The translations under genes were made by a program, and so were the position numbers. A stretch of DNA of 64,000 bases from positions 620,001-684,000 of the forward strand of contig NW_021833026.1 in NCBI RefSeq assembly GCF_006345805.1, written 5' to 3'. The stretch comes from Octopus sinensis. Taxonomy: Eukaryota. Each line of letters begins with the position of its first letter. Position 1 is the stretch's first letter. This document shows positions 3,678 through 60,885 of this stretch, piece by piece. The notes under the pieces were generated by a model that was not told the origin of the DNA, searched no databases, and worked only from the letters and a program-made list of their open reading frames with translations.

Positions 3678-4170
3678 TTATCCGGCGACGCCCGATGTCT
3701 CCAAAGCGATTGGTACGAATATAAAGCGGCGTCCAAGTTCTTGGTATTTTTTAATTTTGGCCGTCTCAGCCTTTTCCGCAGCCGACCCGGGGGAAGTGGC
3801 AGATGACATGATTGCCGATGGAGAGAAAGAATCGATGCACGTAGCATCCCAGACGAGGCACTTGCCTTCCCGAAAAGGAAAGATTGTCATTCCGTCTGGG
3901 CGTTTGCCGTCACCACGGTCCAATCCGACAGGCTCAAGTTGTGACGGAAAGCCTGCAGCCTTGAGGGCTCTAAACACGACGTCATTTAGCGAGGCGTGGC
4001 GGGGACTTCGACCGGCACTCCTGCGACACGAAAGAGGGTGAAGCTTTTTAGCGTCGACTTTGGCTCCACATCGGTATCGGTGGATGCTGCATATGTCGAG
4101 GCCAAGCCGAAGGGAGATCCCAATCCTCAGGCAGTCGTCATCCAAAAAGGTTCCTGTTGATGTAGACGGG
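3678..4170 (-). mobile_element. CRE-like non-LTR retrotransposon, CCHC/RLE region fragment
   Basis: LDDDCLRIG...RCG...HPLSCRRSAGRSPRH...KRPDGMT...WDATCIDSF...ETSG. Confidence 0.9.
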
Positions 4171-4717
4171 TAGAGTTAAAAATAAAATTAATGTTTCCTA
4201 TATATTCTTTAAAATAATGAAATTTTTATCCCCAAAACAATTTTTGTTCAATTTTATTATTTATATTAGTTATTAAAAAGCATTCTTTATACGATCAGGA
4301 ATAAAAGAGTTAATTAAGATATATCATAATTTTTTTCGAGTTCTCACACACTGATGATGAATTCACAGCTTTCTGCACCACCTCAAGCCACAATTATTGC
4401 AGAACTAAAGCCGAGGGTACCTCGTTATGTCTCTCTGTGAAATCATGGTTATGCCTCTATTGTAATCACTTCGGGGTAAATAGTCAACGGTCTTACTTTT
4501 ACAGTGGTTACACTGTTCGTTGACAATGAAAAATTCATATTCTACAAATATGAGGATAACCAAAAAATCAATGTAAATTAACACAAAAGACAGAATGTGC
4601 TCATGTCAACAACTTCATTATACTAGTTTAATCAATAAATTATAATTATTCATAAAAGATACTTCCACACTGATAATTTTCTATGACTGTAGGGGTTAAG
4701 AAGATTCAAAATACAAC
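4171..4717. repeat. ~545-bp AT-rich segment present three times in the window
   Basis: Near-identical to 7486-8039 (direct) and ~45676-46328 (inverted). Confidence 0.9.
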
Positions 4718-5445
4718 TGTAGTCTAACTTCAAGAGACTGCTTGTGAGGTTACAGAATTCCATGTCCTTCTTCGCCAGATGGGCCTTTAGGCCAGATGGG
4801 CTTAGAGGGCATCCGAGAAAGGTTGCTTCTGATGGCTGGGTTATTTGTGCACCGGTGATGAAGTCTTGGATGATCATATTCACGTTAACTTCTAGGCCAA
4901 GGTTGCGCAAAGCAGGAATTAGGCGGGATAGGTCTTCGGTGATAAATTCCACAGAGCCGCCAATGGTCGCGTCGTCCAGGTACCATAAATTGAATGGAGA
5001 GAGGATTGATCGTACTGCCTCGTCGATTGCTAAGGCGAATAGTAATGGTCCAAGAGGGTCGCCTTGTTGGACTCCAGTTCGGGAACGGATGACTTCGTCC
5101 CCATAGATAAGTGAGGTTTCTTCCACGTACGAAAGAAAAACAAGCTGGGAAATCTCAGGAGCCCTCTCGGCGCATACCTCCATTATTCGGTCCCTACTGA
5201 CGATGTTGAACGCGTTCCGCAGATCAAGTTTAACGGCCACATGAGGATGGAGTAAGGCATCCTTTGAGAGAAAGAGAGTTCGGGCCGCGTGTACGGAAGC
5301 TTCACAGCCGTTTGGGATCCCGACTCCCATTTGTTCGAAACTTAGGCGGGAACAAACGATCCTCGAGGCCAATTTAGCAGTCAGACGGCGGAAGTAATTT
5401 CCAACAGCTATGGGACGGATTCCGCCGTCCTTCTTCCGAATGCAA
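4718..5445 (-). mobile_element. CRE-like reverse transcriptase fragment
   Basis: KDGGIRPIAVGN...VKLDLRNAFN...GVQQGDPLGP...WYLDD. Confidence 0.92.
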
Positions 5446-5714
5446 ATTTTATTAATTGTTATCCACGTGATTCATTTGTAAACAAAATTATTAATGTGAA
5501 CTCTCCAATTCTATAAGCTACTTTTTTAATTTTAAATATCATTAGCTTTTGACTAAATAAAAATTATTTTGAATATCTTTTATAAGTTTCCATATAAAAT
5601 TTTCTTCAAATTCCTATTGGGTAGCTGACTTATTTTTAAAAAAAGATATTGTTTTTTGTGTATTTATATAATATTTTAAAAATAAAAATCTAACATGTTG
5701 ATAATTCTTGATAA

Positions 5715-10215: not shown

Positions 10216-10687
10216 ATGAGGTCCATTAAAACCTTCAAGGCAAAAATCTCACGTATAAGAATATCCTTGATGAAAACGACAGCGAGAATATTAACAATGA
10301 TGAACTCCCAATTATTCGCGATAAAGAAATTCAATTCATCCTATGTTTTTCTCTTTAAAATTAAATGCATATATCATTATCGACCATGAATCAAAATTAA
10401 AGCTATTATCATATTTGACTTTGACAGAATGTGCAATCACAGATTGCACGACTTTGAATAGAGTGTGCAATTAACAGATTTTGAAAAACCACTTTGATAG
10501 TTGAAACCACATTAGCACAATCATTAACACAATTTACCACCAATTGACGCACGACCTTGAATAGAGTGTGCAATTAACAGATTTTGAAAAACACTTTGAT
10601 AGTTGAAACCACATTAGCACAACCATTAACACAATTTACCACCAATTGACAGCGCAATCAGAAGAATTTGCGTAAAAATATTAACTA

Positions 10688-18155: not shown

Positions 18156-20116
<1,961 letters not shown>

Positions 20117-27540: not shown

Positions 27541-28222
27541 TATTAATTGGTTGTTTTCCACTAGTTGAGAAGGGGAACATTTTTTGACATTATTGCATAT
27601 ATATGTATTTTGTTTATTTAATATTTTGATGTCATTTTTTAATATATTTCCCTTTTTTGTATTAATTTTTACAAAGTGGTTTAAACTAGAATTTATAGTT
27701 TGATAAATACCGATTTATATTAAATACTGAGGACATGTCCGTGTGTGAAAAAGGAAACATCACCTAAGCGGTTAATAAAAGAGAAAATATAATTATTGTA
27801 TTTTTAATATCTATTTAAATGTTAGAATATAACTAAAAAAAATTTAATATTTATTTTATGTAAATTAAAAGTAAGTCATCTTGCTGCTTAATTCCTCTGG
27901 TTTTCGAGACCAGTGGGATAATTGGACCCAAAGCGCTCAAACTCCTCTCAGAGATTGGTTTAATCATCTCGAGAAGGAGTCACGACAGTCGTGAAACGAG
28001 CTGGCTTTTTCAGCGGATATCGTTCGCGATATTACGTGGAAATTGCCTGCCCATTCTGTGGTCTCCTCGGCGACTTATTTAGTTTAGTTAACTTCTCTTT
28101 TTTCATTTTTAATTAAAAGTATTTGGTTAAAGAAATTCAAAATAAAGTAAGTCATTAACTGGTAAACTTGATGCGGACATGGATTTTTTCTTTCAGGAAT
28201 TTCATTTCATTCATCAAGTAAA
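27541..28222. repeat. Repeated AT-rich block, left part (copy at 38103-38505)
   Basis: TATTAATTGGTTGTTTTCCACTAG... near-identical at 38103. Confidence 0.9.
27880..28143 (+). mobile_element. 5'-truncated 264-bp CRE insertion with 12-bp TSD
   Basis: FETSGIIGPKALK...ETSWLFQRISFAILRGNC; AAAGTAAGTCAT at 27868-27879 and 28144-28155; empty site at ~38430. Confidence 0.88.
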
Positions 28223-28224
28223 AT

Positions 28225-30322
28225 GATGTTCAAACTAGAAAGAAAAAAGTAAGCAATTGGGTGGCTAAGGGAATTGTCGAGGGCCTGAGGGTCAGCTCAA
28301 CGATGCCGCGCTGCGTATTGAGTGGCAGTTTCCGCGGAGCACAGCAACCGAGATTCGCTGGAACAGCCAGCTCGTCTCCCTCCGGTCGTTTGTTTTTGTG
28401 GAGATTTTTCTACCAATGGCGGTGAGGAGTTGAGTCGCAGCCTTTCCGACGATTCCAGAGGTTTCGAAGGCGAGGGGGGCAAACTCAAAAGCGTCCGAAA
28501 TACACCGGTATTTCGTCATCTTTGTCTCTTCAGCCAGCGCACTGGCGGAACCGGGTTTGCGACAGTCCTGGGAAGCATTGTCGCCGAAAAAGAGTCGACA
28601 CACGTGGCATCCCAAACCAGGGACTTGCCTTCCCTAAAAGGAAAGGTCGTCATCCCGTCGGGACGCTTGCCGTCGCTCCGGAAAGGCCGACTGGCTCTAG
28701 GGTGGAAGGGAAACCAGCCGACTCTAGAGCCCCTCCTCACAACGTCATTCAGATGAGTGTGACGGGGAATTCTCCCGCACTCTTCTTACACGACAAGCGT
28801 GCAAGCCGTTTGACGAAATTGAGGACCCGCACCGGCAAGAGTGGGGCTGGCAGATGTCCAAACCCAATCGTAAGCTGATCCCAATCCGCAAGGATTCGTC
28901 GTCCAGTAGTAACCCCGTACTAGGAGTGGGGAGAGCTTTGAGCCAGTCACCCGTGTGCGGCTGACAGGCGCAGTTAAGGGTGGCCAGCTGGAGTTGGTCC
29001 GACTTGGAGCGAAGTTTTCGTAATGTTGTCAGCAGAGAATTTCGTCCCAGCCCTTTGAACTGAAGGGATCGTGGGGAAATCAAGGTCGAGTGAGCACCAC
29101 GTACGGCATGCAGATAAGAATTCCGTGAGCTCATTAAGTTCGAGAGAGGAAGTAGAACTGAGCAAACGGAATTCCTGGAAGCCGACATGGATAGAATAGC
29201 AGGGTAGGGCCAGGTCCGCACAAGGGCGGATCCCGATCCCCCCGAAGCGAGTTGGTAAACTGGCACGGTAAAACCGTCACCAGTGAACCTCAAATTGAGG
29301 TGGAATGTTAGCGATTGGTGGACAAGATTATCGATTCTGGATAATGAGTCTGTGGCAGCGAAACACGGGGAGGAACGGAGGATATAGGTCAGTCTGGGGA
29401 CGAAAAGAAAGTTCTTCAACAAGAAAAACGCAAGATGCGAGCCAAGCCCACGGATCCGATCAGTGAGTAGTTTAATTTCGTCCCATTTAGACGATAAGGC
29501 ATTTTCTATGCCATCAGCGGAAATTGGAGAGCCCAAGATAACTAGATCGCTGGTGGGCGTTAGCCTTAACCCAACGATCAGGCTGCTGAGAGAGGAGAAT
29601 GTGTTGCGGAGAGCGGCGGGGCAAGAGAAATGTTTACGAGTTCGCATTTTTCGCCGTAAGAGATAGTCCGATCTTGGAGAAACCGGAAGTGATTCTCTTA
29701 ACGTCTTCCATAACGACCTCTGTAGGTCCACCAATCGTCACTCGTCCAGGTACCAGAAGTTAACAGTGGAAGAAAGGTTCCGTGCAATGTGTTCAACAGA
29801 GAGGGCAAACAGCAATGGGCCCAGTGGGTCACCCTGCTGAATGCCGCATTCTGACATGATGATCTGATCATGGATCAGAAGGCAGCTTGGGGCAGAGTAT
29901 GCCAGCTTACAATTGGGAAGAGAACGGGGCAACGTGCCGAGACCACTTCGAGCAGATGGTCCCGGCGGACGCAGTTGAATGCGTTGCTGACGTCCACTTC
30001 ACGATGAACTTGCAGTCTTCTGGCTTTGACTGACAAGTTGGCGAGTGCCGTGCGCGAGAATTTCGCAGGCACCTTGGACGCCGACACCGTACTGGAAAGG
30101 GAGAAACTCCAGACTCAGGGGGGAACCACCCTGCGGGACATTATCTTGGCCGAGAGTCTCCTGAAAACGTTACCGACCGCAATGGGCTTCACGCCACCAT
30201 CGGCTTTCGACAGGGCAATGAGGCCAGCAGAGAAAAGAAGATCTCTGGCGACGGTTGGAATCTTTTGCAGGCCCGATTCATCAACTGCAAGTGGACTAGA
30301 AACATTCCTGTCAAATCGACGT
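28225..30322 (-). mobile_element. 5'-truncated CRE-like retrotransposon (RT + RLE), frameshifted
   Basis: DGGVKPIAVGN, DVSNAFN, QQGDPLGP, WYLD, KRPDGMT, WDATCVD, LFQRISVAVLRGNC. Confidence 0.92.
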
Positions 30323-30324: not shown

Positions 30325-30890
30325 TATTTCGTTTATCCTAGTATCCGGCTCAGTATTACTAAGCTAAGGGAAAATATCAAATATATTTCGACGGTATTCT
30401 GCCTTCATGGCCAAGGAAGTATGTCGAACTTTAAAAATAAAAAGACTTTCAAATTGAGCCTAAAATATTCTGTCTTAGAAAGATCATGCTTCTATTTTTA
30501 CTCAAACTTTTAAACCTGAGAATGAGAATTTGTTTTATATTTAGCCAGGTTGGTTAAATCTTGACTTCCTCCGTGGAAATATGGATTAAAAAGTCACTGA
30601 AAAATTGTTTATATTTTTTACTTGATCAAAAAAGTTGAAGAACTGAGTCCCTCAAGACAAGTTAGGAATAATAAGTGATTCACGTCCGATGGTCTTATCT
30701 TCTGACATTGTTGAAAGGATAGTCAAGAGCTCAAAATTCAGGTCACCGACACCGCGCTGCGTATTGAATGGCAGTGTCCGAGATTTTCTGAAAAAGTTTG
30801 TCTCAGTCCGATCGTTAGTTTATATTAAAAGAAGACAACGTTAATAACGTCGTGCATACAGACAATGCCAACTCTGATTGAGTCGATAAA
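30325..30890. repeat. Repeated block, right part (copy at ~38545-39090)
   Basis: ATCCTAGT.TCCGGCTCAGTATTA... near-identical; contains small CRE 3' scraps. Confidence 0.85.
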
Positions 30891-31860
30891 GAAGACGTTT
30901 TTTATAAATTACTAAAAATCCTAAGAAAATCAATTTTCAACAAAAATTTTATTAACGAAAGCGATTTTTTGAATTTTGACTCATGTGTGCACGTAAGAAT
31001 GACGCAAATCCTATTTTGAAAATAAGAATTCTTACAAAATTTCCTCCAAGTTTTCCTTAATTCATATGCCGCTTTATGAATGAATTCAGAATAAAAGATC
31101 ATTACAAATGGAATACTACAACAAATGGCAATAAAAATTGCAAAAAATTCATTTCCGAATTTTAAAGCTTCAAGTATATGGATTAATTCTTTTAAGAATT
31201 AATTTGGAATAAAATATTGTACTAAATCAGGCAATTAGTCAATCCTGTATTTTTATATCAAAGCCATGCTGATTTTTTATAAAAAATGTCATCTTATAAT
31301 CTCAAAGATGTGTTTAATCGTGACGAAACCGCAGTGTTTTTTTAAACACACGTCATAAGACGTTGACACTACAATCCGAAGTAAGAGCATCGGGAAAGGT
31401 TTATAAGGACAGCCTTACACTTATGTTATGTACCAATTATTTGGAAATAAATTAACCCATTTATCATCGGAAAATCAAAAAATCCTCTTTGGATGAAGAA
31501 TTTGAATGTGAAAAAACTTCTATTAACATATGGCAACAGCAAAAAAGCATGGATGAATTGTATTTTGTTTGAAAATTAAGTGAACAATCTTAATTAAAAA
31601 TGAAAATCGAAACATTCTTCTTACGTTAGACTGCGCTCCTGCTCATTATATTGATAGAAAATACGGTAATATTGATTTTTTCCATTCCCGCAAATACCAC
31701 CTCAAAAATACAACCACTTGACCAAGAAATCAGCAGATCTTTTAAAGTGAACTATGAAAACCTCATGATGAGGAATATTACTTTAACTGAAAGAGAGGAT
31801 ACAATTAACTTTTATGAAAAAATCAGTAACTTAACTAATTGATGCAATACCATTGATAAT
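30890..31860 (+). mobile_element. Degenerate pogo/Tigger transposase (CENP-B HTH + DDE_1)
   Basis: FKASSIWINSFK, VFNRDETAVFF, LLTLDCAPAH, PANTTSKIQPLDQEI. Confidence 0.85.
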
Positions 31861-36399: not shown

Positions 36400-39300
36400 C
36401 TAGATTAGTTTTATATTATAAATCGTCACGCTCCGGCAGCCAGTATCGCGTGCGTGTTGCCACGAAGAACTGCAATTCCGATACGTTGGCGAAGCCAATA
36501 CCCCTCGCGACTGTCCCTCCTTCGTTTAGCCAGCATCGCACCAATTTCCTTGAGAAATTCCGCGGTTTTGGATCCCACTACACCAGACGTCTCTATCGAG
36601 ATTGGGACAAAACGGAAAAGTTTTCCGATCTCCAAATACTTAGATATCTTCGCCTTTTCTGCTGCATTAGCAGCCCAACCGGGCGAATGAATATTCCGAA
36701 GAATCATGGACTGGGAGAACGTGTCTACGCACGTCGCATCCCATGCGAGTGATTTTCCCTGGGAGTACGGGAAAAGAGTTATCCCATCGGGCCTTCTGCC
36801 ATCTCCCCGGTCAAGCCCGATGGGTTCCAGGTGTGCTGGAAATCCTGCGCTCTCGAGGGCCCGTCGTATTATGTCATTGAGTGCGGCATGGCGGGGAGCG
36901 CGATCTGCACTCCTCTTGCAAGACAGAGGGTGTAGTCCTTTGGAATCGACTATTCCTCCACACCGGCATCTGTGTTCCTGACAGACGTCAAGACCCAAGC
37001 GTTGTGCAACACCGATTCTCACACAATCGTCGTCCATAAGCGTACCGAATGAACTCATGGAAATGCGTGGAGCCATGCACCACTCCCGTGCTGTGCCCCG
37101 GATAGCAAACAGACGAGCCGGTGTTGGTTCAACTCCCGCTTCAGGTCATCAACGACAGCCTTGCATGATATTGCGTCCCAACAATTCTGTCTCGAGACAT
37201 CATCTGGGATTGAAAGTCCGGCTTCCTTCCATTGCAAGCATGCCTTGTCAAATACTGTGTCCAAGGAGAGTCCAGTAGTGTTACGTAGGATTTCCTGGAC
37301 GAGATGACTGCAGCTTGAAAGCGATGACAGATATGCCGGGAATGCGAAATCCAGCGCCGACCTGAGACCCGTTCCTCCGATGCGTGTAGGAAGCTTGCAT
37401 TGATTCCAACCAGGTTCGTCAAAGTGGATGTTCAAGAGCGATTCAGCTGAACTTCTCAAAGTCCTATCCAGTGTCTGTAGAATGTCTCGATGTTCCAAGC
37501 AGGGAGAACAACGGAGAGCGTATTGGAGTTTAGGCAAGCCAATGCTATTTTTCAAAAGGAAGAATGCAGTATGAGCATTGAGTAAGGAGAGTTTCTCCGT
37601 AACTCTAGAAAGACCCTTGTTTTTTTCCAGCAGATGGCACCGCAGTTCCTTTTCGCCAAGTGGGCACCCAAGAAAGTATGCCCTCTCCCGAGGTAAGACA
37701 GTAATCCCAGGTAATATCGATTTGAAAGACTTGACCACGTTGATAAAATCACTTTCCGAGTATGTGATATTTATCAGCTCCGATTTCTTTATATTTATAT
37801 CAAGTCCGAGTTTTCGTAGTACAGGCACGGCTTGTGACAGAACGTCAAAAACTTTTCCCCACGGCCCTCCAATCGTGGCATCATCAAGATACCAGAGGTT
37901 CAGTTCCGCGCTGATGGAACGTACAGTTTCGTTGATTGCCAACGCAAAGAGAAGTGGACCAAGCGGGTCCCCTTGCTGGACTCCAGTCTCCGAATAGATA
38001 ATCTTGTCCGCAAAGACGAGTGAAGACTTGGTTCCGTAGGCCAGGTAGACGAGTGGAATGAGTTCCGGGGCTCGTTTGCTTACAGTCTCGAAAATTTGAT
38101 TCTATTAATTGGTTGTTTTCCACTAGTTAAGAAGGGGGACATTTTTTGACATTATTGCATATATATGTATTTTGTTTATTTAATATTTTGATGTCATTTT
38201 TTAATATATTTCCCTTTTTTGTATTAATTTTTACAAAGTAGTTTAAACTAGAATTTATAGTTTGATAAATACCGATTTATATTAAATACTGAGGACATGT
38301 CCGTGTGTGAAAAAGGAAACATCACCTAAGCGGTTAATAAAAGAGAAAATATAATTATTGTATTTTTAATATCTATTTAAATGTTCGAATATATCTAAAA
38401 AATTTTTAATATTTATTTTATGTAAATTAAAAGTAAGTCATTAACTAGTAAATTCGATGCAGACATGCATTTCTCCTTTCAGGGATTTCATTTCATTTAT
38501 CAAGTTCATTTTGAACGATTTCACTTTTGTAGGCCCGATATAATTTATCCTAGTGTCCGGCTCAGTATTAGTATGCTAAGGGAAAATATCAAATATATTT
38601 CGACGGTTTGTGCCTTCATGGCCAAGGAAGTATGCAGAACTTTTAAAATAACAAGACTTTTAAATTGAGCCTAAAATATTCTGTCTTAGAAAGATCATGC
38701 TTCTATTTTCACTCAAACTTTTAAACCTGAGAATGAGTATTTGTTTTATATTTAGCCAGGTTGGTTAAATCTGGACTCCCTCCGTGGAAATATGGATTAA
38801 AAAGTCACTCAAAAACTGTTTATATTTTTTATTTTATCAAAAAAGTTAGAGGACTGAGTCCGTCAATACAAGTTAGGAGTAATAAGTGATTCACGTCCGA
38901 TGGTCTTATCTTCTGACATTGTTGAAAGAATAGTCGAGAGCTTAAAATTCAGGTCAAGAACGCCGCGCTGTGTATTGAATGGCAGTGTTCGAGATTTTCT
39001 GAAAAAGCTCGTCTCAGTCCGGTCCTTAGTTTTTGTAATAATTTTCCTACCAATGTCGGTAAAAAGGTGAGTCGCAGCGTTGCCGGCTATTTATACTAAA
39101 AATCCTAAGAAAATCAATTTTAACGAAAATTTTATTAACGAAAAATTTTGACTCGTGTGTGCACGTAAGAATAACGCAAAAAACAATCGAAAAACATAGT
39201 TTCAAAGAGAGCTCGAAGTTTTTAACTATCAAAAAATTTAAAAACATTACACAATCTCAAGTGAGTAAAGTATTCAACATGCCAATAGGAACAATAAACA

Positions 39301-40560
39301 AAATCCTAAACAATGAATCCTATTTTGAAAATAAGAATTCTTACATAATTTCCTCCAAGTTTTCCTTAATTCATATACCGCTTTATGAATGAATTCAGAA
39401 TAAAAGATCATTCGGCGATACTATTACAAATGGAATGCTACAACAAATGGCAATAAAAATTGCAAAAAATTAATTTCCGAATTTTAAAGCTTCAAGTATA
39501 TGGATTAATTCTTTTAAGAATAAATTTGGAATAAAATATTGTACTAAATCAGGCAATTAGTCAATCCTGTATTTTTATATGACCTCCACTGCTGCTCGCC
39601 GCGAACGACGAAATGCTGCGCCGCACTTCGCCTTCAGTAACAGTTGTCCTTGGCATATCTCCCGGGAGCACGAATGGGCGGTAATCTTCCGGCGGACATG
39701 GATGTTTTCGTCTGATCTGCTCGAGGACTTCAGGTGTTGGAGCCAGGACGGTATCGTCGCTGGAAACGACCCGCAACGCCGCCCGGACGTCGCCTTCAAG
39801 AAGTTTACGATTTACTCTCTCTCCGAGTGTATCTGGGCAATTCCGAAAGAGCGTATGATCGGCGTCCGGATGTTTTGCTTTTGAAAATTCCGTTTTGTTA
39901 ATAGATCGTGATTGGAAATCGTGGATATTTTTCTTCATTTTTGAGGAAAGTGAGTTTCCAAGCATGGAACTTTCTCTAGTGTTCCGATGTGGCTCCTTTG
40001 ACTCAGTGTAAGGTATGCCAAGTGCAAGCGGGGCGAAACCGAAGAGTTTGAGCCAGGCCTCTTGGTCGTTGGACGTGAGTGCATCGTCAATAGCGGAAGC
40101 CAGGCATATAGCTGCAGGGATCCGGACGGGTCTCGGGATCTTAAGTGGAATCTTGTTGGCCTTCCTTTGCTCAGACAAGAAAAGCAGGAGAGAATCCGTA
40201 TTGTCGAAATCCAACGGCTCGCTAGAGACGACAGGTTCATTCGATATTTTCGCCTGGGTCTTCCGGCCAAAGCCCATACATACATTGCAGTTCCATAAAC
40301 TGAGTGAGGATGCAGCCTGCCGGGACATCCTTACACATCCGAGGTGGAAAAAGTTCCCCCAAATCGAGCAGAAGAGCCCGTACTTGCGTGCATTGCCACA
40401 ACCGCACGAAGAACACACCAGACCAACTCTCACAGGGATAATGTGCGTAGTGTTGTGTTCTTGCATCTTGGAGACTGTTTCTACGCACTCTATTTGTTCG
40501 ATGGCTCTTTTTTCTTTCTTCTTTTTCCAGTTCCTTTCGTTCCTTTAGATTTATGTGCCC
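36400..40560 (-). mobile_element. CRE-like retrotransposon, near full length, interrupted at 38103-39580
   Basis: N-terminal PHD-like CSSC..CSIW..HLGC..WNCNVC (39561-40466), RT (37055-38100), CCHC + RLE (36426-37076). Confidence 0.92.
38103..39580. repeat. 1478-bp block copied from the 27541-31258 region, including Tigger N-terminus
   Basis: Matches 27541-27879 + 28156-28222 + 30325-31258 without the CRE insertions; encodes HTH SQVSKVFNMPIGTINKIL. Confidence 0.85.
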
Positions 40561-44600: not shown

Positions 44601-46060
44601 AAAGCAAGTTTTTTTGGCATGATCACTAAACTCTACGCTATAATTTCAAATAAAATAACGTATAAAAATTTTATATAAAATTATTTTTAAAATGCCCCAA
44701 TAAACGGGGTCGATAATTTTTTTAGTATTCTATAGGTAGAAAATTGAATAAACTGCTATAAAATGAAAGGATTGATTGTTGATTTCAGCTTAACTTTGAT
44801 GATTAAAGATATTTGTCAAAACAGGTAAAATGAAATACTCTCATCATGCTTTGGGCTTTGCGACAACTCGCCTATAGTCGAGTTCAAGTGAAAATATTCC
44901 AAGGGTAAATAAAATTTTTAAAAGATTTATATTTTCTTTAATATTACCTTTGTTATACTGTCACTTGCCGTCGTAAGTGCGCGTGTTTCAGTATTTTTCC
45001 CAACGAGGTAGGGGCAAATACCTACACTTTGCTTACTTACTCCTCCAATCAACCCCCGCAGGCAAAAATTTTAAAAACAATGATGACATTATAGAGCATG
45101 ACGTATTTTAAAATAAATAAAAATTTTATTTTTACCAGATTAAATCTAAATAATTAAAATTTGAACAATTTTTTAAATTTAATCCTTATTATGACTGATT
45201 TTGAACTGCTTAAAAGCCAAAGAGATAGCAAACTTTTACTACACCGCAACTATTTGTATAATTAAAAAACTTTTATTTTTCCTCTTACAACTATAATAAA
45301 AATTTCTAGGGACTGCTGAATCGAAGGTAAATACGATACAATTCTTATTGGCAGATTTCTATTAATTTTACTGTTTCAATTTTTCTTTATAAATAAATTT
45401 AACGAATTGTTACGATACAATTCTTACCCGATAGGACTTGGTTTAGAGGGGTTTGACTGCAGTACTAAAATTAAATAAATCGTCTTATTTTTCGAATATG
45501 ATTCTTTTTGTTGTTAAAAATAATTTGAGTTTTAGATGCTTTCGGAATGATTAAAAACTTGAGGCCAAGAAAGTAATGATGGATTCATGGATACAATCAC
45601 GTAACAAATAATAACACGTGAATATTTCAAATCGTTTTTAATCACAAAATAAAATCCATAGTTAAAATAACTAGTGTTGTATTTTGAATCTTCTTAACCC
45701 CTACAGTCGTAAAAAATTATTATAATTATAATTTATTGATTAAACTAGTATAATGAAAGTTGTTGACATGTTGCACATTCTGTCTTTTGTGTTAATTTTC
45801 ATTGATTGTTGAGTTATCCTCATAATTGCAGAATATGAATTTTTCATTGTTAACGAAACGGTGTAACCACTGTAAAAGTAAGACCGTTGACTATTTACCC
45901 ACGAAGTGACTACAAATAGAGGCATAACCATGATTTCACAGAGAGACATAACGAGGTACCCTCGGCTTTAGTTCTCCAATAAGTGTGGTTTGAGGTGGTG
46001 CAGAAAGCTGCGAATTCATCATCAGTGTGTGAGAACTCGAAAAAAATTATGATATATCTT

Positions 46061-46184
46061 ATGGAATAAGAGGATATATTTATTTATGGAATAAGAGGAT
46101 ATATTTATGGAATAAGAGGATTTATTTATGAAATTAGAGGATATATTTATGAAATTAGAGGATATATTAATGAAATACCCTGTA
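46061..46184 (+). repeat. ~21-bp tandem repeat x5, unique to duplication copy 2
   Basis: ATGGAATAAGAGGATATATTT / ATGAAATTAGAGGATATATTT units; absent at the equivalent sites near 7630 and 4318. Confidence 0.85.
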
Positions 46185-46857
46185 AATTAACTCTTTTATT
46201 CCTGATCTTATGAAGAATGCTTTTTAATAACTAATATAAATAATAAAATTGAACAAAAATTTGTTTTCGGGATAAAAATTTCATTATTTTAAAGAATTTA
46301 TAGGAGACATTAATTTTATTTTTAACTATTTGACCTAGAATATTAACTCTAAACACTGCATGTGATTGTTTTAACTGTGAAAAATATTTTTTTTTAATTC
46401 ATTTTTTATTTTTAACTTCATAGCTGTTCCCATTCTTGTCAACAACTTAATATATTCTCGTATCTACCTTTTCTTATAGCTGCATCGTTCGATGTGCTGA
46501 ATTTATGTTTAAATAATTCATCTAATATTTTGCTGAAAAATGGTCCCGATCGAGACACACCTGCGGGATAGGCACACAGCTGGACTATGACAAATGTCAC
46601 TTAAACCGTGACAAAAGAATTTATAATTAATCCATAAGTTCTCTTTTGGTAATAGCTGAGAAACTCCCAAATGATTTAAAAACTTATAAATTTGAAAAAT
46701 ATTGGTGCTAAAAGCAAAATTGTTTTTTTTGAAAATGAAGTAATTGAACAAAAGGTGAACATTTTTTTAGGAAACAAATTATAAATATAAAAATAAAATT
46801 TTATTTGTTTATTATTTTATAAATTATTATTGCTATGCAAATATTTAATAAAATAAT

Positions 46858-47709
46858 TTGATGATTAAAAGAATCACTTCAGTTATCCTGACATTTACTT
46901 TACTCCTTGTTACATTTTTCTTTTCAAATGTTACCTATGAATTTCAAATAAATAAAATGACATCCATATACACTAAAAACGACTTCTCTAATCATCAATG
47001 GAATCGGTTTTATTTAATAGAAGAACAAAAATTATTCTATTGCAAAATCCCTAAAGTTGGATCAACGACAATGCTGAAATGGTTACTGATGACTTACTGT
47101 ATTAAAAACAAAATCAAAAACTGTACTCGATTTTCTCAAAATGAAATTCACGAAGTCAATTATATAAAAACGTATGAGAAAAGTTTTATTAATTTGAATT
47201 CAATCAACAATATGGAAGGCGTTCAAAAAATCTTGATAGTAAGACATCCAGCCGAACGCATAGTCTCTGCATATTTAAACAAATTTATTTACGAAACAAA
47301 ACGTGTCGGAAAATCGCCACACTATGTTCAACAAGTTCGACAAGCCTTAACTGGCTATCCTGAAGAGTTTGTAACATTTGAACAATTTGTCAGTTATTTA
47401 ATAAATAACTCCCAAAAGGCTTCACAATTTAATGAACATTGGGCATTAATGAGCGATTTGTGTTTGCCCGGATACATCAATTACAAAATAATATATCTAG
47501 AACAACTTGATGAATTTATGCAACATCTTTTTAAGATTTACGGATTAACAGAAAAAGGAATGTTTTGGATCAAAGACGTTACGCATAAAACGAACTCTGT
47601 TGATTATGTTTCCAAATATTTTTTGAATTTGACGACAGAAATGAAATATGCTTTTTACAATTTGTACAAAAATGATCACCTCTATTTTGGGTTTAAGCCT
47701 TATTTGTAA
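46858..47709 (+). CDS. Carbohydrate sulfotransferase paralog, 283 aa, intronless
   Basis: 278/283 residues identical to 6173-7024. Confidence 0.9.
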   Translation: MMIKRITSVILTFTLLLVTFFFSNVTYEFQINKMTSIYTKNDFSNHQWNRFYLIEEQKLFYCKIPKVGSTTMLKWLLMTYCIKNKIKNCTRFSQNEIHEVNYIKTYEKSFINLNSINNMEGVQKILIVRHPAERIVSAYLNKFIYETKRVGKSPHYVQQVRQALTGYPEEFVTFEQFVSYLINNSQKASQFNEHWALMSDLCLPGYINYKIIYLEQLDEFMQHLFKIYGLTEKGMFWIKDVTHKTNSVDYVSKYFLNLTTEMKYAFYNLYKNDHLYFGFKPYL

Positions 47710-48843
47710 TAAATAATTATTAATTTAATAAACAACATTCTATTCTATAAATAAATTTAACATTTTATTAATCAAAGATTATCCAAGATATTATTGTTTT
47801 TAAATCTTATATTTTATTTCAGTAAATCGTTGGTCAATAAAAAGTGTTAAAAGTGTTAAAGTGTTATCTTTGTAAACAAGAAAGTCAATTTATTGATTGA
47901 CATTTTTTGTTAGAATTGCATGGATTAATAAAATATTAATTTCTTTTCAGGTATCATGAAATGTGTTATTGTCAAAAAAAATTAACGACTATTTATTTAA
48001 AAAATACTGACTAATTAATGATGTTTCCCTTCAACAGAGGAAAGCCACTTATCTGGGACGCTACGTGTGTAGACTAATTCTCTCCCAAGAACCTTCTGAT
48101 GTCCGCATCCACCCATGGATCAATAATCGCCACAACTGCTGAATACAAAAAGATACGGAAGTACTCTTCACTTGTGGAGAAGTACCTCGAAAGGACCAGA
48201 ACCCATTATCAAGAATTATCAACATTTTAGATTTTTATTTTCAAAATATTGTATAAATACACAAAAAACAATATCTTTTTTTTAAAAATAAGTCAGCAAC
48301 CCAATAAGAATTTGAAGAAAATTTTATATGGAAACTTATAAAAGATATTCAAAATAATTTTTATTTAGTCAAAAACTAATGATATTTAAAATTAAAAATA
48401 ATAATTTTGTTTACAAATGAATCACGTGGATAAGAATTAATAAAATTATACAAACCGATGGTGAATTGATTAATCATACGCCACAACAACTTTTGAGGTT
48501 TTGGTTTTACCCGAAGCAAATTTTTGATTATGTAAAAATTCAAATGAATCTAGAAAGCATATTTTAAATATTTTTACTCTAAATTAAAGTATATTGTTGC
48601 TAGAGTCATGATTGTTTTACATAAATATTCTCTACTTTCCGGTTCTAGATCACTAAAATCTGAATTTCATAATTATCTTTATCTAAATAAAAATATCAAA
48701 AAAGCTACGCAGTGTTTGCCAGATGAGTGTCTACCAACAACTTCTAAATTGTAAGAAAAAGAGAACAAAAATATTTGATCATTTCTTGAAGTCTGCTAAT
48801 AATATTTATCTAGCTGTTGTGGTGTGATTAACGGAAACCTCAG

Positions 48844-51800
48844 ATGGTAAATAAAGAACGAAGCGAAGACGAAGCACGAGGAACAAAGCCACTGAGGACA
48901 ACTCGGGCATGTCTCTTTTGTGGGCAGTCGAATATCAGGAAATTTGGAATTAACTGCACGCCATGTGAATCATTCGCCCATTTGGGCTGCATAAAAATGA
49001 GCAAAGCCTGCGCCGAGACGCTGTCAAGCTGGCAGTGCCCCCCTTGTATTGGAAACGAGGTCCCCAGGCGGGAAACAACAGCCCAGCCAAACTTTACATC
49101 ACCACATACTGACCACATTCTCTTGAAGATCTCGAACCTCCGGAAAGCCAGGAAAATCCCAGTAAAAATCCCAAAAGGAGCACGTATTGCCGCAGCAACG
49201 TGCCTCTCAGACCTCATTGACAACGCACTGTCCTCTGACAGCTGGGAATCCTGGCTAAAACTTATATGCTTCGCACCTGTTGCACTCGGAACACCTACAA
49301 CGGAATCTGATAACCAGAGTAAAGAAACAAACCCCCGGCTAAACTTAACCGGGAAACTGAAAGGAAGAATATTGAATTACGGCAGTCATAGCATACACGC
49401 AATACTTGAACAGCCACTTATTGCCAATGCGGTCAAAACCAGAGGAGCATTCACCAAAGATGCCCCCAACAAACTGAAGGAGCGAGTGAATCGGAAACTT
49501 CTGGAGGGCGATGTGCGGGCAGCCCTACGGGTTATCACGTCCGATGACACCGTGCTGTCTAGCACCCCCGAGGTCCTGAATACCTTAATTCAGAAGCACC
49601 CAAGTGCACCGAGTGATTATGTAAAGTTCTCGAATCCTGAAGGAACCCAAGAGATTATGATTACCGAATCAGAAGTGCGGCGCGGAATCGCTTCCTTTGC
49701 CGCTAGCAGCAGCGGAGGCTTGGATGGGTTACGCCCCGGCCATATCAAGGACCTAACGTCCACCTACACCTCGGAAGCAGGACGCTGTCTTGTTAAATCG
49801 ATCACGGACCTAATAAGGAAAATGGTGAATGGCGACATCCCGGAGTATGCCAGAGAATTGCTCTTCTCCGCAAGGCTACTCGCGTTCAAAAAACCAACGG
49901 AGGAATCCGCCCCATTGCGGTCGGAAACTATTTCAGAAGACTCGCAGCGAAGATTGCTTCGACCCTCGTGAGCCGCCCACTCGGTGCGGAGTTCTTCCCA
50001 GAACAAATGGGTGTTAGTATCCAGAACGGATGTGAGGCAGCGGTTCATGCGGCAAGGCGTTTCTTCACACAGAAGAATACTGCAAACGAATGCATTGGAA
50101 TCAAATTGGACATAACCAATGCATTCAATTCTCTCAGAAGAGACTCCATTATGGAAACGTGTTGGAAGAGGGCTCCCATGCTTTTCCCTCTTGTTAAATT
50201 GTCATACGGAGAAGATACGTCTCTGTTTTTGATGATGAAATCATCAAATCAAAAACTGGTGTCCAGCAGGGAGATCCGCTCGGACCCCTCTTATTTGCCC
50301 TGACAATTGATGATGTTGTGAGATCAATTGACGCACAACTAAATCTCTGGTATCTCGACGATGCCACAATTGGAGGATCATTCGAGGAAACATACAATTC
50401 TTTACGTCAAGCACTTCCCGCATTAAAACACTTGGGATTGGACATCAATATTAACAAATCAGAGTTAATAAATGTCTCATACTCAAACACCGACTTTCTC
50501 TCTATCAAGGAGTTTTTCAACGAACTGCTTCCCGGGATCCCGACTGTGCCAGTTGATAAACTATATTTCCTTGGATGTCCACTCAGTGAAGACGAACTCA
50601 GGAACCATCTACTTTCTAAAAATGAAGAATTGTCTCGCCTCGCAAAAAGATTGTCATGCCTCGACTCTCACACATCCTTCTTCCTGATGAGAAACAACAT
50701 CGGACTACCCAAGCTTTTATACCTACTGCGAAGTTCACCCTGCCACGAACATTACGACAGTCTACTTTCGATAGACAAATCTCTCAAACAAACTGTTGAG
50801 TCACTAATCAACGTCCGCTTCGACGAACTCGGTTGGAAGCAATGTAAGCTTCCCTCTGGATTTGGGGGTGTCGGTCTAAGATCGGCGCTGGAGGTCGCGT
50901 ACCCGGCATATCTTTCGTCTCTCTCAAGCTGCAACCATTTGACACGGCAAGTCCTTCGTCACACTATTGGACTTCGCTGGAATGAGTCATTTGATGAAGC
51001 TTGCCGGGATTGGAACGGGTCAGGACTCAAAATCCCCGAAGACACAACGAAACAAAGAACTGGGATAACATTGTCTGCTCCAAAATTTCAGAAGGGCTTA
51101 AAAAAGAAGCAAATCAACATCGCCTTGCTTGCCTGGTGTCAGCCTCAAGTGGAGGGAGCGGAGCATGGCTTGGTGCAATCCCTTGCCCAAATCTCGGGAC
51201 TTTTTTGGACGACGATTCTTTGAGGATTGGAATCGGACAAAGACTTGGACTAGACGTTTGCCAGGAGCACCGATGCCGCTGCGGGAAAACGGTCGATGCG
51301 AAGGGATTGCACCCGCTATCCTGCAGGAGATCCGCCGGAAGAGGACCACGTCACGCCGCTCTGAACGACGTGATCGTCAGAGCTCTGAAGGCTGCAGGCT
51401 TCCCAGCACAGCTTGAACCAGTGGGTCTCGATCGAGGTGATGGAAAGAGACCTGACGGGATGACTCTTTTCCCTTTCAACTCCGGACGATCTTTGGTCTG
51501 GGACGCAACTTGCGTCGATACTTACTCAAGCACGAATCTCCTTAAATCGGTTCAGACACCTGGAGCAGCTGCCTCAATCGCGGAAAACCTTAAAACCAAA
51601 AAATATTCCTTCCTCGGGGACCGCTACAGATTCACCCCTGTTGCGGCTGAGTCATCAGGAGCTGTTGGCCCAGCGACTGCCGAGTTCTTGCGCGAACTCG
51701 GAAGAATGCTCGCCACAAAGAAAAATGATCCTCGTGAAGGAGTATGGCTAAGACAAAGGATCGGAATAGCCATACTCCGAGGGAACTCGCTTTCCATACA

Positions 51801-51900
51801 GGCAGCGGGCTTCCTCAATTGATTTCTCAAATCAATCTCTTCTCTGAATTTATTAACTGACTTTAAAAAAAATAAATAAAATTCAATTTCTGATATTTAT
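48844..51900 (+). mobile_element. Near-intact CRE-like retrotransposon: PHD finger + RT + CCHC + RLE
   Basis: Four overlapping ORFs separated by three -1 shifts; CLFC..CTPC..HLGC..WQCPPC; QQGDPLGP; WYLDD; CRCG..HPLSC..RH; RPDG..WDATCVD; stop at 51822, A-rich 3' UTR. Confidence 0.95.
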
Positions 51901-59699: not shown

Positions 59700-59950
59700 A
59701 GACCTCCAACCTCATATTCATGTCCAGTAAACTCACGGCAACCGATTCCCACCCTGCCCTATTTCTATTGAAGAACTGGTTAGCAATCCCCAAGCTACTA
59801 TTCACCCTCAGAGGTGATCCCTGCTTCACAAATCACGTGGGTTTTTCCACCTTTGACCATGCTCTCAGATCATGCCTCGAAACAATCTGTAATGTCTCTT
59901 TCGATGACCTCGGCTGGAAGCAGGAAATCCTCCCGGTTAAGCACGGTGCG
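59700..59950 (+). mobile_element. CRE post-RT fragment
   Basis: DSHPALFLLKNWLAIPKLLFTLR...LETICNVSFDDLGWKQ..LPV. Confidence 0.8.
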
Positions 59951-60034
59951 TAAAGACCAACCATGTAATATAGTATTTGTTTGTTTGTTTGTTTTTTTAA
60001 GAGTTAAATTTATTTCAAATCAAAAGAGAAATAG

Positions 60035-60700
60035 TCATTGGCAGATAGCCAGAGTATTGCCTCTGACTATGGCTATAGATATTCGTTCGGTTAAATACCG
60101 GTGCTCACACGGGTCGCCGGTAACCCTTTCGATTAATGAGGCAATACGCTGGAGTAGGGTCCGAGTAGAAGGCCCCTGTATTCCTGACGTCTCAACAGCC
60201 AGGGGGACAAACACTCTCCTATTCCCAATTCCAGCGTATTTCTCAGCTTTTCTTTTCTCAGCCCGTTCAGACGGGGCTCCCGGATTCTCGATGCATAATT
60301 TGATATTCTGATTAGAAAAGGAGTTCACACCTGTGACGTCCCAAACCAGACACTTTCCCCTCTGGAATGGAAATGTGGTCATCCCATCGGGTCTTCTGCC
60401 GTCCTCTACGAAAATCCCTGCAGGTTCCAATTGTGTGTGGAATCCCGCAGTTCGAAGAGATCGACAGATGATCTGGTTCAGTTCGGAATGCCGTGAGGAA
60501 CGTCCAATTCCGTTTCGACAGGAGAGGGAGTGATATCCAAACTCGTCAGTCCACACGCCGCACCGGCATTGGTGTTTTTCATAAACGCGTAGACCGAGGC
60601 GCAAACAAACTCCAATTCTTACGGCTTCATCGTTAAGAAGGCAGCCAGTTGTATTACAAGGGTAACAGTTTAGCCACGCGCCGCTTAGGGGCTGGTATTT
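60035..60700 (-). mobile_element. CRE 3' fragment (CCHC + RLE)
   Basis: SGAWLN...CRCG..HSLSC..RH..RRPDGMT..WDVT..ERISIAIVRGN. Confidence 0.9.
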
Positions 60701-60885
60701 GTTAAAAATTAATTTTGTTTTAATCAAATATATCAATTGAATATTTATGTATTTTTATTTAATAAAGGCTGATATAATATTCATCAAAATGGGTTTTGTT
60801 GACGTTTTTAAACATAACTTAAATTTTCATTCATGTTTAAATCATGAACATTATTTATAATCATAATATAATTCTAAATAAAGGT

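What the first reader, a model, noticed from the sequence alone, without database searches (positions are those of the whole stretch)
48844..51822. CRE-like retrotransposon with an N-terminal PHD finger, probably one 993-aa ORF
Seen: C4-H-C3 spacing (CLFC..CTPC..HLGC..WQCPPC) precedes RT, CCHC and RLE. A diverged second copy (39561-40466) has the same module with one Cys changed to Trp. The three breaks are all -1 shifts at short A or T runs (~49893, ~50228, ~51055); adding three bases gives 993 codons. Known: PHD fingers read histone H3 tails and occur in ORF1 of some APE-type LINEs, whereas RLE elements typically carry C2H2/Myb DNA-binding modules. Inference: a chromatin-guided rather than sequence-specific RLE element, consistent with at least 15 dispersed pieces here. 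I cannot confirm it is undescribed.
Basis: partly seen in the sequence, partly recalled or inferred. Interest (0 to 1): 0.75.

Follow-up and report, generated by a model that had tools for sequence, protein, structure and literature searches.

The report
Octopus CRE-type retrotransposon with PHD finger
This is a nearly intact copy of a CRE-group jumping gene (a non-LTR retrotransposon with a restriction-like endonuclease) in an octopus genome; its protein starts with a PHD zinc finger where relatives such as R2 carry DNA-binding fingers, a layout shared by a very large animal family and not discussed in the papers I could search.

Summary
Window 48844-51822 (+) reads as 993 codons once three 1-base deficits at A6, T5 and A3 runs are bridged. 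The order is PHD finger, RT, C-x-C-G...H...C knuckle and PD-(D/E)xK endonuclease, with all catalytic motifs intact.

The RT-to-knuckle region is 36% identical (E 3e-116) to Repbase Cre-1_BM (RepeatMasker class LINE/CRE-II). Next come the trypanosomatid elements SLACS, CRE1, CRE2 and CZAR. HERO gives no significant match. "CRE-like" is therefore right.

The PHD call is solid. All eight zinc ligands plus Trp63 are at least 90% conserved in 49 homologues, and 44 of the 49 hit PF00628. The AlphaFold model has pLDDT about 95 there, and every leading Foldseek hit is a PHD finger.

The window comes from the Octopus sinensis assembly. It holds 16 related pieces (11 kb) at unrelated AT-rich sites, none in an RNA gene. 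One piece has a clean 12-bp target duplication next to a paralogous empty site.

Histone reading is not supported. The H3K4me3 cage positions are Ser, Gly and Phe here, and the family conserves a basic N-x-R-K motif instead.

The lineage is catalogued and very large. I found no paper describing its PHD.

The parts
48684..48692 (.). Possible upstream copy of a 9-bp target-site duplication (TAAATAAAA). This is tentative.
   Evidence: The same 9-mer follows the A8 tail directly at 51873-51881. The 9-mer occurs 15 times in 64 kb, so about 0.05 are expected in the 200 nt upstream of the ATG. The GC profile does not settle the 5' boundary.
48693..48843 (+). Putative 5' UTR. The boundary is uncertain.
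   Evidence: Lies between the candidate duplication and the ATG.
48844..51822 (+). Single conceptual ORF of 993 codons, broken into four pieces by three 1-base deficits.
   Evidence: More than 1,887 homologues were found, and full-length ones of about 960-1,000 aa are 36-46% identical.
48910..49047 (+). PHD finger (aa 23-68, C4HC3 with Trp63 two residues before Cys7).
   Evidence: PF00628 E 2e-4 over the full profile. The ligands are at least 90% conserved and 44 of 49 homologues hit PF00628. The model has pLDDT 94-96. Foldseek finds AL1 PHD 5y20 at TM 0.82 and rmsd 1.3 A, then TAF3, PPS and DIDO. The family profile matches PHF2, PHF8, BPTF and CFP1 at about 1e-10.
49105..49863 (+). Helical region between the PHD and the RT core. 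It probably corresponds to the N-terminal extension of RLE-LINE RTs; that equivalence is my inference.
   Evidence: The AF2 model is mostly helical with pLDDT 80-98. W137, K218, D223, KH251-252, the GLDGLRP motif and other residues are conserved. The Repbase alignment begins here, with CRE 'APGLDGWT' against 'SGGLDGLRP' in this element.
49888..49893 (+). Frame shift 1 at an A6 run (frame 1 to 0).
   Evidence: One extra base restores FKK(T/P)NGGIRPIAVG, matching the homologues' KK(D/G)GGIRPIAVG.
49888..50500 (+). Reverse transcriptase core (Pfam RVT_1, conceptual aa 349-553) with KLDITNAFN, QQGDPLGP and YLDD.
   Evidence: RVT_1 E 1.3e-17; motifs.
50226..50230 (+). Frame shift 2 at a T5 run (frame 0 to 2).
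51054..51056 (+). Frame shift 3 at an A3 run in caaag (frame 2 to 1).
   Evidence: The homologues read QKNWD or QKSWD here.
51268..51324 (+). Zinc knuckle HRCRCG-x8-H-x3-C (CCHC, C-x-C type).
   Evidence: H, C, C, G, H and C are at least 90% conserved. The same C-x-CG...H spacing is seen in CRE1, CRE2, CZAR, SLACS and Cre-1_BM, whereas R2, HERO and NeSL have C-x2-C.
51412..51606 (+). Restriction-like endonuclease core: LEPVG, RPDG, WDATC and AENLKTKKY (PD-(D/E)xK with a distant Lys).
   Evidence: E, RPDG, WD, T, AE, K and Y are nearly invariant in 49 homologues. No Pfam model matches this part, so the assignment rests on motif comparison with the R2-type RLE described in PMC5678591.
51823..51872 (+). 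Short 3' UTR (42 nt) ending in an A8 tail.
   Evidence: The other copies also end in A-rich tails: A11, A8 and A7(CAAA)4.
51873..51881 (.). Possible downstream copy of the 9-bp duplication (TAAATAAAA). This is tentative.
39582..40466 (-). Copy 2, 5' part: PHD module with Cys4 changed to Trp (TGG at 40359-40361) plus the N-terminal region. It is 45% identical to the main copy.
36426..38101 (-). Copy 2, 3' part: RT C-terminal half, linker, knuckle, RLE, 3' UTR and A11 tail. It is 51-56% identical to the main copy.
   Evidence: It is separated from the 5' part by the 1.48-kb repeat X (38102-39580), and about 108 codons are missing.
27880..28143 (+). 5'-truncated 3' fragment of another family member, flanked by a 12-bp target-site duplication AAAGTAAGTCAT (27868-27879 and 28144-28155).
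   Evidence: A paralogous empty site at 38430-38441 carries one copy of the 12-mer.
28220..30264 (-). 5'-truncated copy inserted about 64 bp from the previous one in the same repeat, in the opposite orientation. It appears to have a small target deletion instead of a duplication.
3681..5462 (-). Another diverged copy (RT to RLE, 55-64% identical), interrupted by a 550-bp repeat at 4168-4717.
59921..60709 (-). 3' part of another copy (47% identical) ending in A7(CAAA)4.

Best explanation
Identity: the feature is one full-length or nearly full-length copy (about 3.18 kb) of a CRE-group, CRE-II-lineage non-LTR retrotransposon in the Octopus sinensis genome.

Protein: a single ORF encodes, in order, a PHD finger, a helical N-terminal extension, a reverse transcriptase, a linker with a C-x-C-type CCHC knuckle, and a PD-(D/E)xK restriction-like endonuclease. 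Every catalytic motif is intact. The only defects are three 1-base deficits in homopolymer runs. These are either very recent slippage mutations or consensus errors of the assembly.

Mechanism (inferred from the family and from the insertion scars): the protein binds its own A-tailed RNA, the endonuclease nicks chromosomal DNA, and the RT primes cDNA synthesis from the nick (target-primed reverse transcription). This leaves frequent 5' truncations, A-rich 3' ends, and short target duplications or deletions.

Targeting: insertion sites are AT-rich but not one fixed sequence.

Role of the PHD (inferred, roughly 0.3 for any one ligand): the PHD sits where R2-type elements carry their zinc-finger/Myb target-binding module. 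Related sublineages keep it next to captured sequence-specific DNA-binding domains (RFX, nuclear-receptor zf-C4) or replace it with C2H2 fingers. I therefore read it as a general tethering module for chromatin or nucleic acid rather than a sequence reader. A canonical H3K4me3 reader is unlikely for this copy.
For: Shown:
- The 993-codon reading and the three homopolymer shifts.
- RVT_1 at E 1e-17 and intact RT, knuckle and RLE motifs, which are nearly invariant in 49 homologues.
- Classification: Cre-1_BM 36% identity over 564 aa, E 3e-116; SLACS 1e-25; CRE2 4e-21; CZAR 5e-19; CRE1 2e-16; R2 1e-13 to 1e-8; HERO not significant.
- NJ tree on 497 columns: 100% bootstrap with O. sinensis P0083 and P0001, and about 70% for the grouping with Cre-1_BM and with the trypanosomatid CRE elements.
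- PHD fold.
- Source genome: the window's sulfotransferase gene maps to GCA_006345805.1 contig VCDQ01001555.1, and P0083, which NCBI names Octopus sinensis, lies in the same assembly.
- Scars of target-primed reverse transcription: a 264-bp 5'-truncated fragment with a 12-bp duplication and a matching empty site; A-rich tails on five of six 3' ends; 16 pieces with unrelated flanks; no Rfam or tRNA gene in the window.
- Modular N-terminus in relatives: PHD+RFX (P0128, P0134, P0142), PHD+zf-C4 (P0079, P0089), C2H2 (P0094, P0199, P0208).
Against: - No close DNA copy of this subfamily is available, so the element's ends and its own target duplication are only tentative.
- No Pfam model covers the endonuclease, so that call rests on motifs.
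- The PHD of this copy scores below Pfam's gathering cut-off (21.5 against 24 bits).
- Nothing here measures what the PHD binds.
- One 3' end (28220, minus strand) has no A tail.
- AT-rich insertion sites may only reflect the AT-rich genome.
Confidence: 0.85

Rival explanations
1. One reading: the PHD reads a histone H3 tail mark (such as H3K4me3 or unmodified H3K4) and so steers endonuclease nicking to particular chromatin states.
For: By sequence, the family PHD profile is closest to the H3K4me3 readers PHF2, PHF8, BPTF, CFP1 and TAF3 (E 1e-10 to 1e-9), and by fold to Alfin-like, TAF3, PPS and DIDO PHDs. A minority of relatives keep Trp at the cage position two residues before the His (9 of 49, for example P0010, P0013, P0017, P0020). 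Insertions are dispersed. PHDs in CR1/L2 ORF1 proteins have been proposed to give general genome targeting (PMC4120745).
Against: Cage positions aligned to BPTF Y17, Y23 and W32 are S29, G35 and F44 in this copy and are variable across the family. The strand that pairs with the basic H3 tail carries a conserved N-x-R-K(R/K) motif, where readers have acidic or aromatic residues. No binding or insertion-site data exist.
Confidence: 0.22
2. The PHD is a nucleic-acid or nucleosome-surface binding module. Through the conserved basic N-x-R-K patch and the L-T-R-x-Q-A helix it holds target DNA or the element's RNA without sequence specificity, or it doubles as a nuclear-localisation signal.
For: N30, R32 and K33 are conserved in 32-41 of 49 sequences, next to further basic residues at position 34. 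The domain occupies the slot of the DNA-binding ZF/Myb module of R2-type elements (general knowledge; PMC5678591 background). One PDB match is the FBXL19 CxxC-PHD chain 6asb_C; that this structure is DNA-bound is my recollection, not shown by the tool. Sublineages add true DNA-binding domains beside it.
Against: This is inferred purely from residue conservation. Most characterised PHD fingers bind peptides, not nucleic acids. No electrostatic or docking analysis was possible with these tools.
Confidence: 0.35
3. The three frame shifts are assembly errors, and the genomic copy is an intact, potentially active element.
For: All three are single-base deficits in homopolymers (A6, T5, A3). There is no stop codon in 993 codons and every catalytic motif is intact. 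From my own recollection, not checked here, this assembly is long-read based, a data type prone to homopolymer deletions.
Against: Homopolymer slippage is also the commonest real indel. With about 1% divergence, zero stop codons is not unlikely. Neighbouring copies are clearly decayed. The two sulfotransferase ORFs in the window are unbroken, so the assembly is not riddled with such errors.
Confidence: 0.45
4. The ORF is a domesticated host gene (PHD plus an RT-like protein) rather than a transposon.
For: The reading frame is long and otherwise open, and NCBI models of relatives are labelled as ordinary 'uncharacterized protein LOC...'.
Against: There are 16 decayed, truncated and nested copies within 64 kb, a target duplication with an empty site, A tails, three frame shifts, and thousands of paralogous clusters in public data.
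Confidence: 0.02

Closest known systems
Repbase Cre-1_BM (Bombyx mori), RepeatMasker class LINE/CRE-II
   Same: It is 36% identical over the 564 aa from the GLDG motif through RT, thumb and linker to the C-x-CG...H...C knuckle (E 3e-116). It falls in the same clade in the NJ tree and has the same single-ORF RT-knuckle-RLE order.
   Different: The published alignment starts at the RT, so I could not see Cre-1_BM's N-terminus. Lepidopteran relatives in the protein search (for example Cydia P0094) carry a C2H2 finger where the octopus element has a PHD.
Trypanosomatid CRE clade (SLACS, CZAR, CRE1, CRE2)
   Same: These are the next-best RT matches (E 1e-25 to 2e-16). They share the 'GLDG' motif, the C-x-CG knuckle spacing and a C-terminal RLE. 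NCBI's automatic name for a barnacle relative is 'Retrotransposable element SLACS protein'.
   Different: Those elements insert at one site in spliced-leader RNA genes (general knowledge; PMC4640811 calls the CRE clade mostly target-specific). The octopus copies are dispersed, end in poly(A), and the window has no spliced-leader or other RNA gene.
R2 elements (R2Bm, R2Tg; solved structures 8gh6, 9dou, 9nl2)
   Same: They are single-ORF RLE LINEs with an N-terminal targeting module, RT, CCHC knuckle and PD-(D/E)xK endonuclease, and they move by target-primed reverse transcription. The RT similarity is E 5e-9 to 1e-13.
   Different: R2 has C2H2 plus Myb at the N-terminus, a C-x2-C knuckle and a fixed 28S rDNA target. 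Here there is a PHD, a C-x-C knuckle and dispersed sites.
HERO clade
   Same: HERO is an RLE LINE lineage already described as mostly not target-specific (PMC4640811), so a dispersed RLE element is not unprecedented.
   Different: There is no significant RT similarity (E above 0.5) and HERO falls in a separate clade.
PHD-bearing ORF1 or single-ORF CR1 and L2 LINEs (Metcalfe & Casane 2014, PMC4120745)
   Same: A PHD finger sits at the N-terminus of a LINE protein. It is proposed, without functional tests, to help general genome targeting.
   Different: Those are APE-endonuclease LINEs of the Jockey superfamily. This one is an RLE element of the CRE group, with the PHD fused directly to the RT polyprotein.

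Membership tests
CRE group (CRE / CRE-II) non-LTR retrotransposons | The RT clusters with CRE reference elements rather than with R2, R4, NeSL or HERO. | tested here: met
   phmmer and blastp against 15 Repbase-derived references from PMC5678591 supplement S5B gave Cre-1_BM 3e-116, SLACS 1e-25, CRE2, CZAR and CRE1 at 1e-21 to 1e-16, R2 at 1e-13 or weaker, and HERO not significant. The NJ tree gave about 70% bootstrap. The full Repbase/RTclass1 set was not available.
CRE group (CRE / CRE-II) non-LTR retrotransposons | The RT is followed by a Cys/His knuckle and a C-terminal restriction-like endonuclease, with no APE domain. | tested here: met
   Motifs at aa 810-828 and 858-922, nearly invariant in homologues. 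No APE hit in Pfam.
CRE group (CRE / CRE-II) non-LTR retrotransposons | Knuckle spacing C-x-C-G...H, as in CRE1, CRE2, CZAR, SLACS and Cre-1_BM (R2, HERO and NeSL have C-x2-C). | tested here: met
   CRCG-x8-H-x3-C here, compared with 'C-LCG', 'C-VCG' and 'CVCG' in the references. I noted this feature from the alignment myself; it is not a published definition.
CRE group (CRE / CRE-II) non-LTR retrotransposons | Site-specific insertion into spliced-leader RNA genes (the classical trypanosomatid members). | tested here: not met
   No Rfam family and no tRNA in the window. Six 3' junctions have unrelated flanks. One insertion lies inside another repeat. This feature defines the trypanosomatid subgroup, not the RT clade.
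PHD finger (Pfam PF00628) | C4HC3 ligand pattern with an aromatic residue two positions before Cys7. | tested here: met
   C23, C26, C38, C41, H46, C49, C65, C68 and W63, each at least 90% conserved in 49 sequences.
PHD finger (Pfam PF00628) | Score at or above Pfam's gathering threshold. | tested here: inconclusive
   This copy scores 21.5 bits against the 24-bit cut-off. Of the full-length homologues, 44 of 49 hit at E 0.01 or better, the best at 7e-8, and P0134 scores 39 bits. No RING or FYVE model scores.
PHD finger (Pfam PF00628) | Cross-braced two-zinc PHD fold. | tested here: met
   AF2 pLDDT 94-96 for aa 21-70. The leading Foldseek PDB hits listed are all PHD fingers, with 5y20 at TM 0.82 and rmsd 1.3 A. 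This is a prediction, not an experiment.
H3K4me3-reading PHD subclass (BPTF, PHF2/8, TAF3, ING, Alfin-like) | Aromatic cage of two to four aromatic residues, including Trp two positions before the ligand His. | tested here: not met
   The aligned positions are S29, G35 and F44 in this copy. Trp at position 44 occurs in 9 of 49 relatives.
HERO clade | RT similarity to HERO references. | tested here: not met
   HERO-2_DR E 0.57 and HERO-1_BF E 1.2.
R2 clade | N-terminal C2H2/Myb module and a 28S rDNA target. | tested here: not met
   There is a PHD instead, no rRNA in the window, and the RT is closer to CRE.

The most novel reading that the evidence does not exclude
In a very large metazoan CRE-II lineage, the N-terminal PHD is the element's targeting module and recognises a chromatin feature (a histone tail state or a nucleosome surface). 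These would then be RLE-type LINEs whose nicking site is chosen by chromatin rather than by DNA sequence. The lineage has also repeatedly re-aimed itself by capturing host DNA-binding domains (RFX, nuclear-receptor zf-C4, C2H2) next to or in place of the PHD, and in some branches it has added a C-terminal USP-type deubiquitinase.
Probability: 0.2. Interest if true: 0.7.

Novelty: new variant of a known kind. Interest (0 to 1): 0.42.

Why it matters
RLE-type LINEs such as R2 are the model for site-specific retrotransposition and are now being engineered for gene insertion. Their N-terminal module decides where they land.

This family shows that slot filled in several ways: by a PHD finger alone, by a PHD plus an RFX or nuclear-receptor DNA-binding domain, or by C2H2 fingers. 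That is a natural series of re-targeting experiments.

If the PHD contributes to site choice, it would link LINE integration to chromatin state.

For octopus genomics, the finding documents a CRE-type LINE copy that may still be active, and it shows that 17% of this 64-kb window derives from the family.

As it stands, the element is a member of a catalogued lineage, and the functional claim is untested.

Tried and rejected
- Literature: eight full-text searches found no paper describing a PHD in a CRE or other RLE element. The PHD hits in PMC3849965 and PMC2861651 were irrelevant (a grant code, and no occurrence in the text). The Fell et al. inventory cited in PMC13580325 is not in the library.
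- A word-indexed search with a profile of the PHD domain alone (A2) returned nothing, so I could not trace the domain's origin.
- blastn of the element against the window found no close DNA copy (64-69% identity at best). No subfamily consensus or firm element ends could be derived.
- The GC profile does not mark the 5' boundary.
- Programmed frameshifting was rejected because the homologues are single uninterrupted ORFs.
- RING and FYVE were rejected because no such Pfam or PDB hit appears.
- HERO membership was rejected.
- A host-gene search with the sulfotransferase ORF returned only the window's own protein. The organism was identified instead through the contig record and a named paralogue.
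- The second O. sinensis locus (L002) has a 5'-truncated copy without the PHD, so it added no second PHD example.
Full report
**1. What is in the sequence**

Window 48844-51822 (+) stands out at 41-45% GC in a 26-35% GC background. It holds four overlapping ORF pieces in frames 1, 0, 2 and 1.

Each junction is a 1-base deficit in a homopolymer:
- A6 at 49888-49893
- T5 at 50226-50230
- A3 at 51054-51056

With an X at each shift, the reading is 993 codons with no stop. One extra base at each site restores motifs that the homologues have (FKK.NGGIRPIAVG, SLF.DDEIIKSKTGVQQGDPLGP, TKQ.NWD).

- C4HC3 finger, aa 23-68
- RT with KLDITNAFN, QQGDPLGP and YLDD
- Knuckle HRCRCG-x8-H-x3-C, aa 810-828
- PD-(D/E)xK-type endonuclease motifs LEPVG, RPDG, WDATC and AENLKTKKY, aa 858-922

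Pfam gives RVT_1 at E 1e-17. It gives PHD PF00628 at E 2e-4 over the whole 47-position profile, at 21.5 bits, just under the 24-bit gathering score. There is no RING or FYVE hit.

**2. The PHD finger is real**

A protein search found more than 1,887 relatives. Full-length ones of about 960-1,000 aa are 36-46% identical, and many already carry precomputed PF00628 plus PF00078.

In an alignment of 48 full-length relatives with the window's N-terminal piece, the eight zinc ligands and Trp63 are each at least 90% conserved. Of the 49 members, 44 hit PF00628, the best at 7e-8.

An AlphaFold2 model built on that alignment has pLDDT 94-96 for residues 21-70. Every leading Foldseek PDB match is a PHD finger, led by Alfin-like 1 (5y20, TM 0.82, rmsd 1.3 A), then TAF3, PPS and DIDO.

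A profile of the family's PHD matches PHF2, PHF8, BPTF, CFP1 and TAF3 at E 1e-10 to 1e-9.

**3. Which lineage it belongs to**

Supplement S5B of Mahbub et al. 2017 (PMC5678591) provides Repbase-derived RT-to-knuckle sequences for R2, R4/Dong, NeSL/Utopia, HERO and CRE. Against these, the conceptual protein scores as follows:

| Reference | Result |
|---|---|
| Cre-1_BM (RepeatMasker LINE/CRE-II) | 36% identity over 564 aa, E 3e-116 |
| SLACS | E 1e-25 |
| CRE2 | E 4e-21 |
| CZAR | E 5e-19 |
| CRE1, Cre-1_HM | E 2e-16 |
| R2 | E 1e-13 to 1e-8 |
| HERO | not significant |

A neighbour-joining tree (497 columns, 100 bootstraps) puts the element with an O. sinensis paralogue (P0083) and P0001 at 100%. 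It lies inside a group with Cre-1_BM and then the trypanosomatid CRE elements, at about 70%. HERO, R2 and NeSL fall outside.

The C-x-C-G knuckle spacing is also the CRE pattern, not the R2/HERO C-x2-C pattern.

So "CRE-like" is correct, and the lineage is catalogued. CRE-type LINEs have also been reported as nearly cephalopod-specific among molluscs (PMC10294476).

**4. Source genome**

The window's sulfotransferase gene lies on contig VCDQ01001555.1 of GCA_006345805.1. P0083, which NCBI names Octopus sinensis, lies in the same assembly.

**5. How it moves and where it lands**

tblastn with 11 family queries finds 16 pieces totalling 11.2 kb, which is 17% of the window. They belong to several diverged subfamilies (35-64% protein identity).

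Five of six 3' ends have a 10-75-nt 3' UTR followed by an A-rich tail (A8, A11, A8, A7(CAAA)4, or a short A run). Their downstream flanks share nothing beyond AT-richness. The window has no Rfam family and no tRNA.

One insertion can be read exactly. A 264-bp 5'-truncated 3' fragment (27880-28143) is flanked by AAAGTAAGTCAT on both sides. A paralogous copy of the host repeat at 38430-38441 shows the empty site with a single copy of the 12-mer.

A second, oppositely oriented copy sits about 64 bp away in the same repeat, with an apparent small target deletion.

These are the scars of target-primed reverse transcription without a fixed target.

For the main copy, a 9-bp TAAATAAAA occurs directly after the A8 tail and again 151 nt upstream of the ATG. 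About 0.05 such matches are expected by chance. I treat that duplication as tentative.

**6. What the PHD might do**

When aligned to BPTF, the cage positions Y17, Y23 and W32 correspond to S29, G35 and F44 here. Trp at the W32 position occurs in only 9 of 49 relatives.

Between Cys2 and Cys3, where H3 readers present acidic or aromatic side chains to the basic H3 tail, the family conserves N-x-R-K followed by another basic residue.

In relatives the N-terminal slot is modular:
- PHD plus an RFX DNA-binding domain (P0128, P0134, P0142)
- PHD plus a nuclear-receptor zf-C4 domain (P0079, P0089)
- C2H2 fingers instead of the PHD (Cydia P0094, P0199, P0208)

I read this as the PHD being a general tethering module, to which some lineages add a sequence reader. 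Its ligand remains open: a histone tail, the nucleosome surface, DNA or RNA.

**7. What is and is not new**

Already known:
- CRE and CRE-II as a lineage.
- CRE-type LINEs in cephalopods.
- Dispersed RLE elements (HERO, PMC4640811).
- PHD fingers in APE-type CR1/L2 LINEs, for which the authors state no functional study exists (PMC4120745).

The family itself is very large. A profile search of 1.84 billion representative proteins gives 9,019 clusters at E 1e-30 or better. About 28 of the best 150 align from the PHD onward.

What I could not find in eight literature searches is any description of a PHD at the head of a CRE or other RLE-type element. Repbase itself was not available.

I therefore rate it a new variant of a known kind, of moderate interest. 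The chromatin-guidance idea remains a hypothesis.

**8. The frame shifts**

All three are single-base deficits in homopolymers, in an otherwise stop-free frame with intact catalytic motifs. That fits either very recent decay or consensus errors. The two complete sulfotransferase ORFs nearby are unbroken. Only the reads can decide.

Noticed in passing
Relatives P0012, P0014, P0041, P0050, P0062, P0063, P0068, P0069, P0110 (not in the window): Some family members carry a ubiquitin-specific protease domain (PF00443 / PF13423). In the two I read (P0012, P0062) it lies C-terminal to the endonuclease in the same ORF. P0062 also has two PHD fingers. I know of Ulp1 proteases in NeSL but not of a USP in a LINE.
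   Followed up: partly
Relatives P0079, P0089, P0128, P0134, P0142 (not in the window): Host-type DNA-binding domains are fused at the N-terminus of CRE-II proteins. They are a nuclear-receptor zf-C4 domain (best E 4e-15) and an RFX winged-helix domain (E 6e-12), the latter next to the PHD in P0128 and P0134. This looks like natural re-targeting by domain capture.
   Followed up: partly
window 5445-8454 and 45261-48447: An inverted segmental duplication of about 3 kb at 94% identity. Each arm carries an unbroken 283-aa ORF of a Sulfotransfer_2 (PF03567) gene (6173-7024 minus, 46858-47709 plus) and an old CRE-II fragment. Just beyond the duplication boundary on each side lies a different CRE-II copy (3681-5462 and 48844-51822).
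   Followed up: partly
window 38102-39580; also 27540-27879 plus 28144-28219 plus 30332-31258: A 1.48-kb repeat ('X') with the same ends at two loci. At one locus it splits CRE-II copy 2, and about 108 codons are missing there. At the other it has itself received two CRE-II insertions about 64 bp apart. Part of X (38928-39091) resembles a CRE-II 3' end at 69% identity. Its nature is unknown.
   Followed up: partly
window 9437-10236 and 11830-13198: Two arrays of a 95-96-bp satellite (8 and 14 units, 93% matches) in inverted orientation. They are bordered by (TGTC)n at 9363-9414 and (ACAG)n at 13221-13287, with 102-bp duplicated units between them. Together they look like one large foldback-type structure.
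   Followed up: no
window 4168-4717 and 7483-8039: A 550-bp repeat at 98% identity. One copy interrupts the CRE-II copy at 3681-5462.
   Followed up: no
window 17389-17967 (-) and 18437-18835 (-): Long open exon-like ORFs of host genes. One is a WD40-repeat protein (my reading of the sequence, not searched). They show that the window is a genic region interleaved with transposons.
   Followed up: no
L002 (O. sinensis contig VCDQ01008158.1) 2502-10635: A second octopus locus also holds several CRE-II pieces packed together. One is a 5'-truncated copy (the NCBI gene model P0083) lying head-to-head with another copy, with further fragments 2 kb downstream. This hints at clustering of these elements.
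   Followed up: partly
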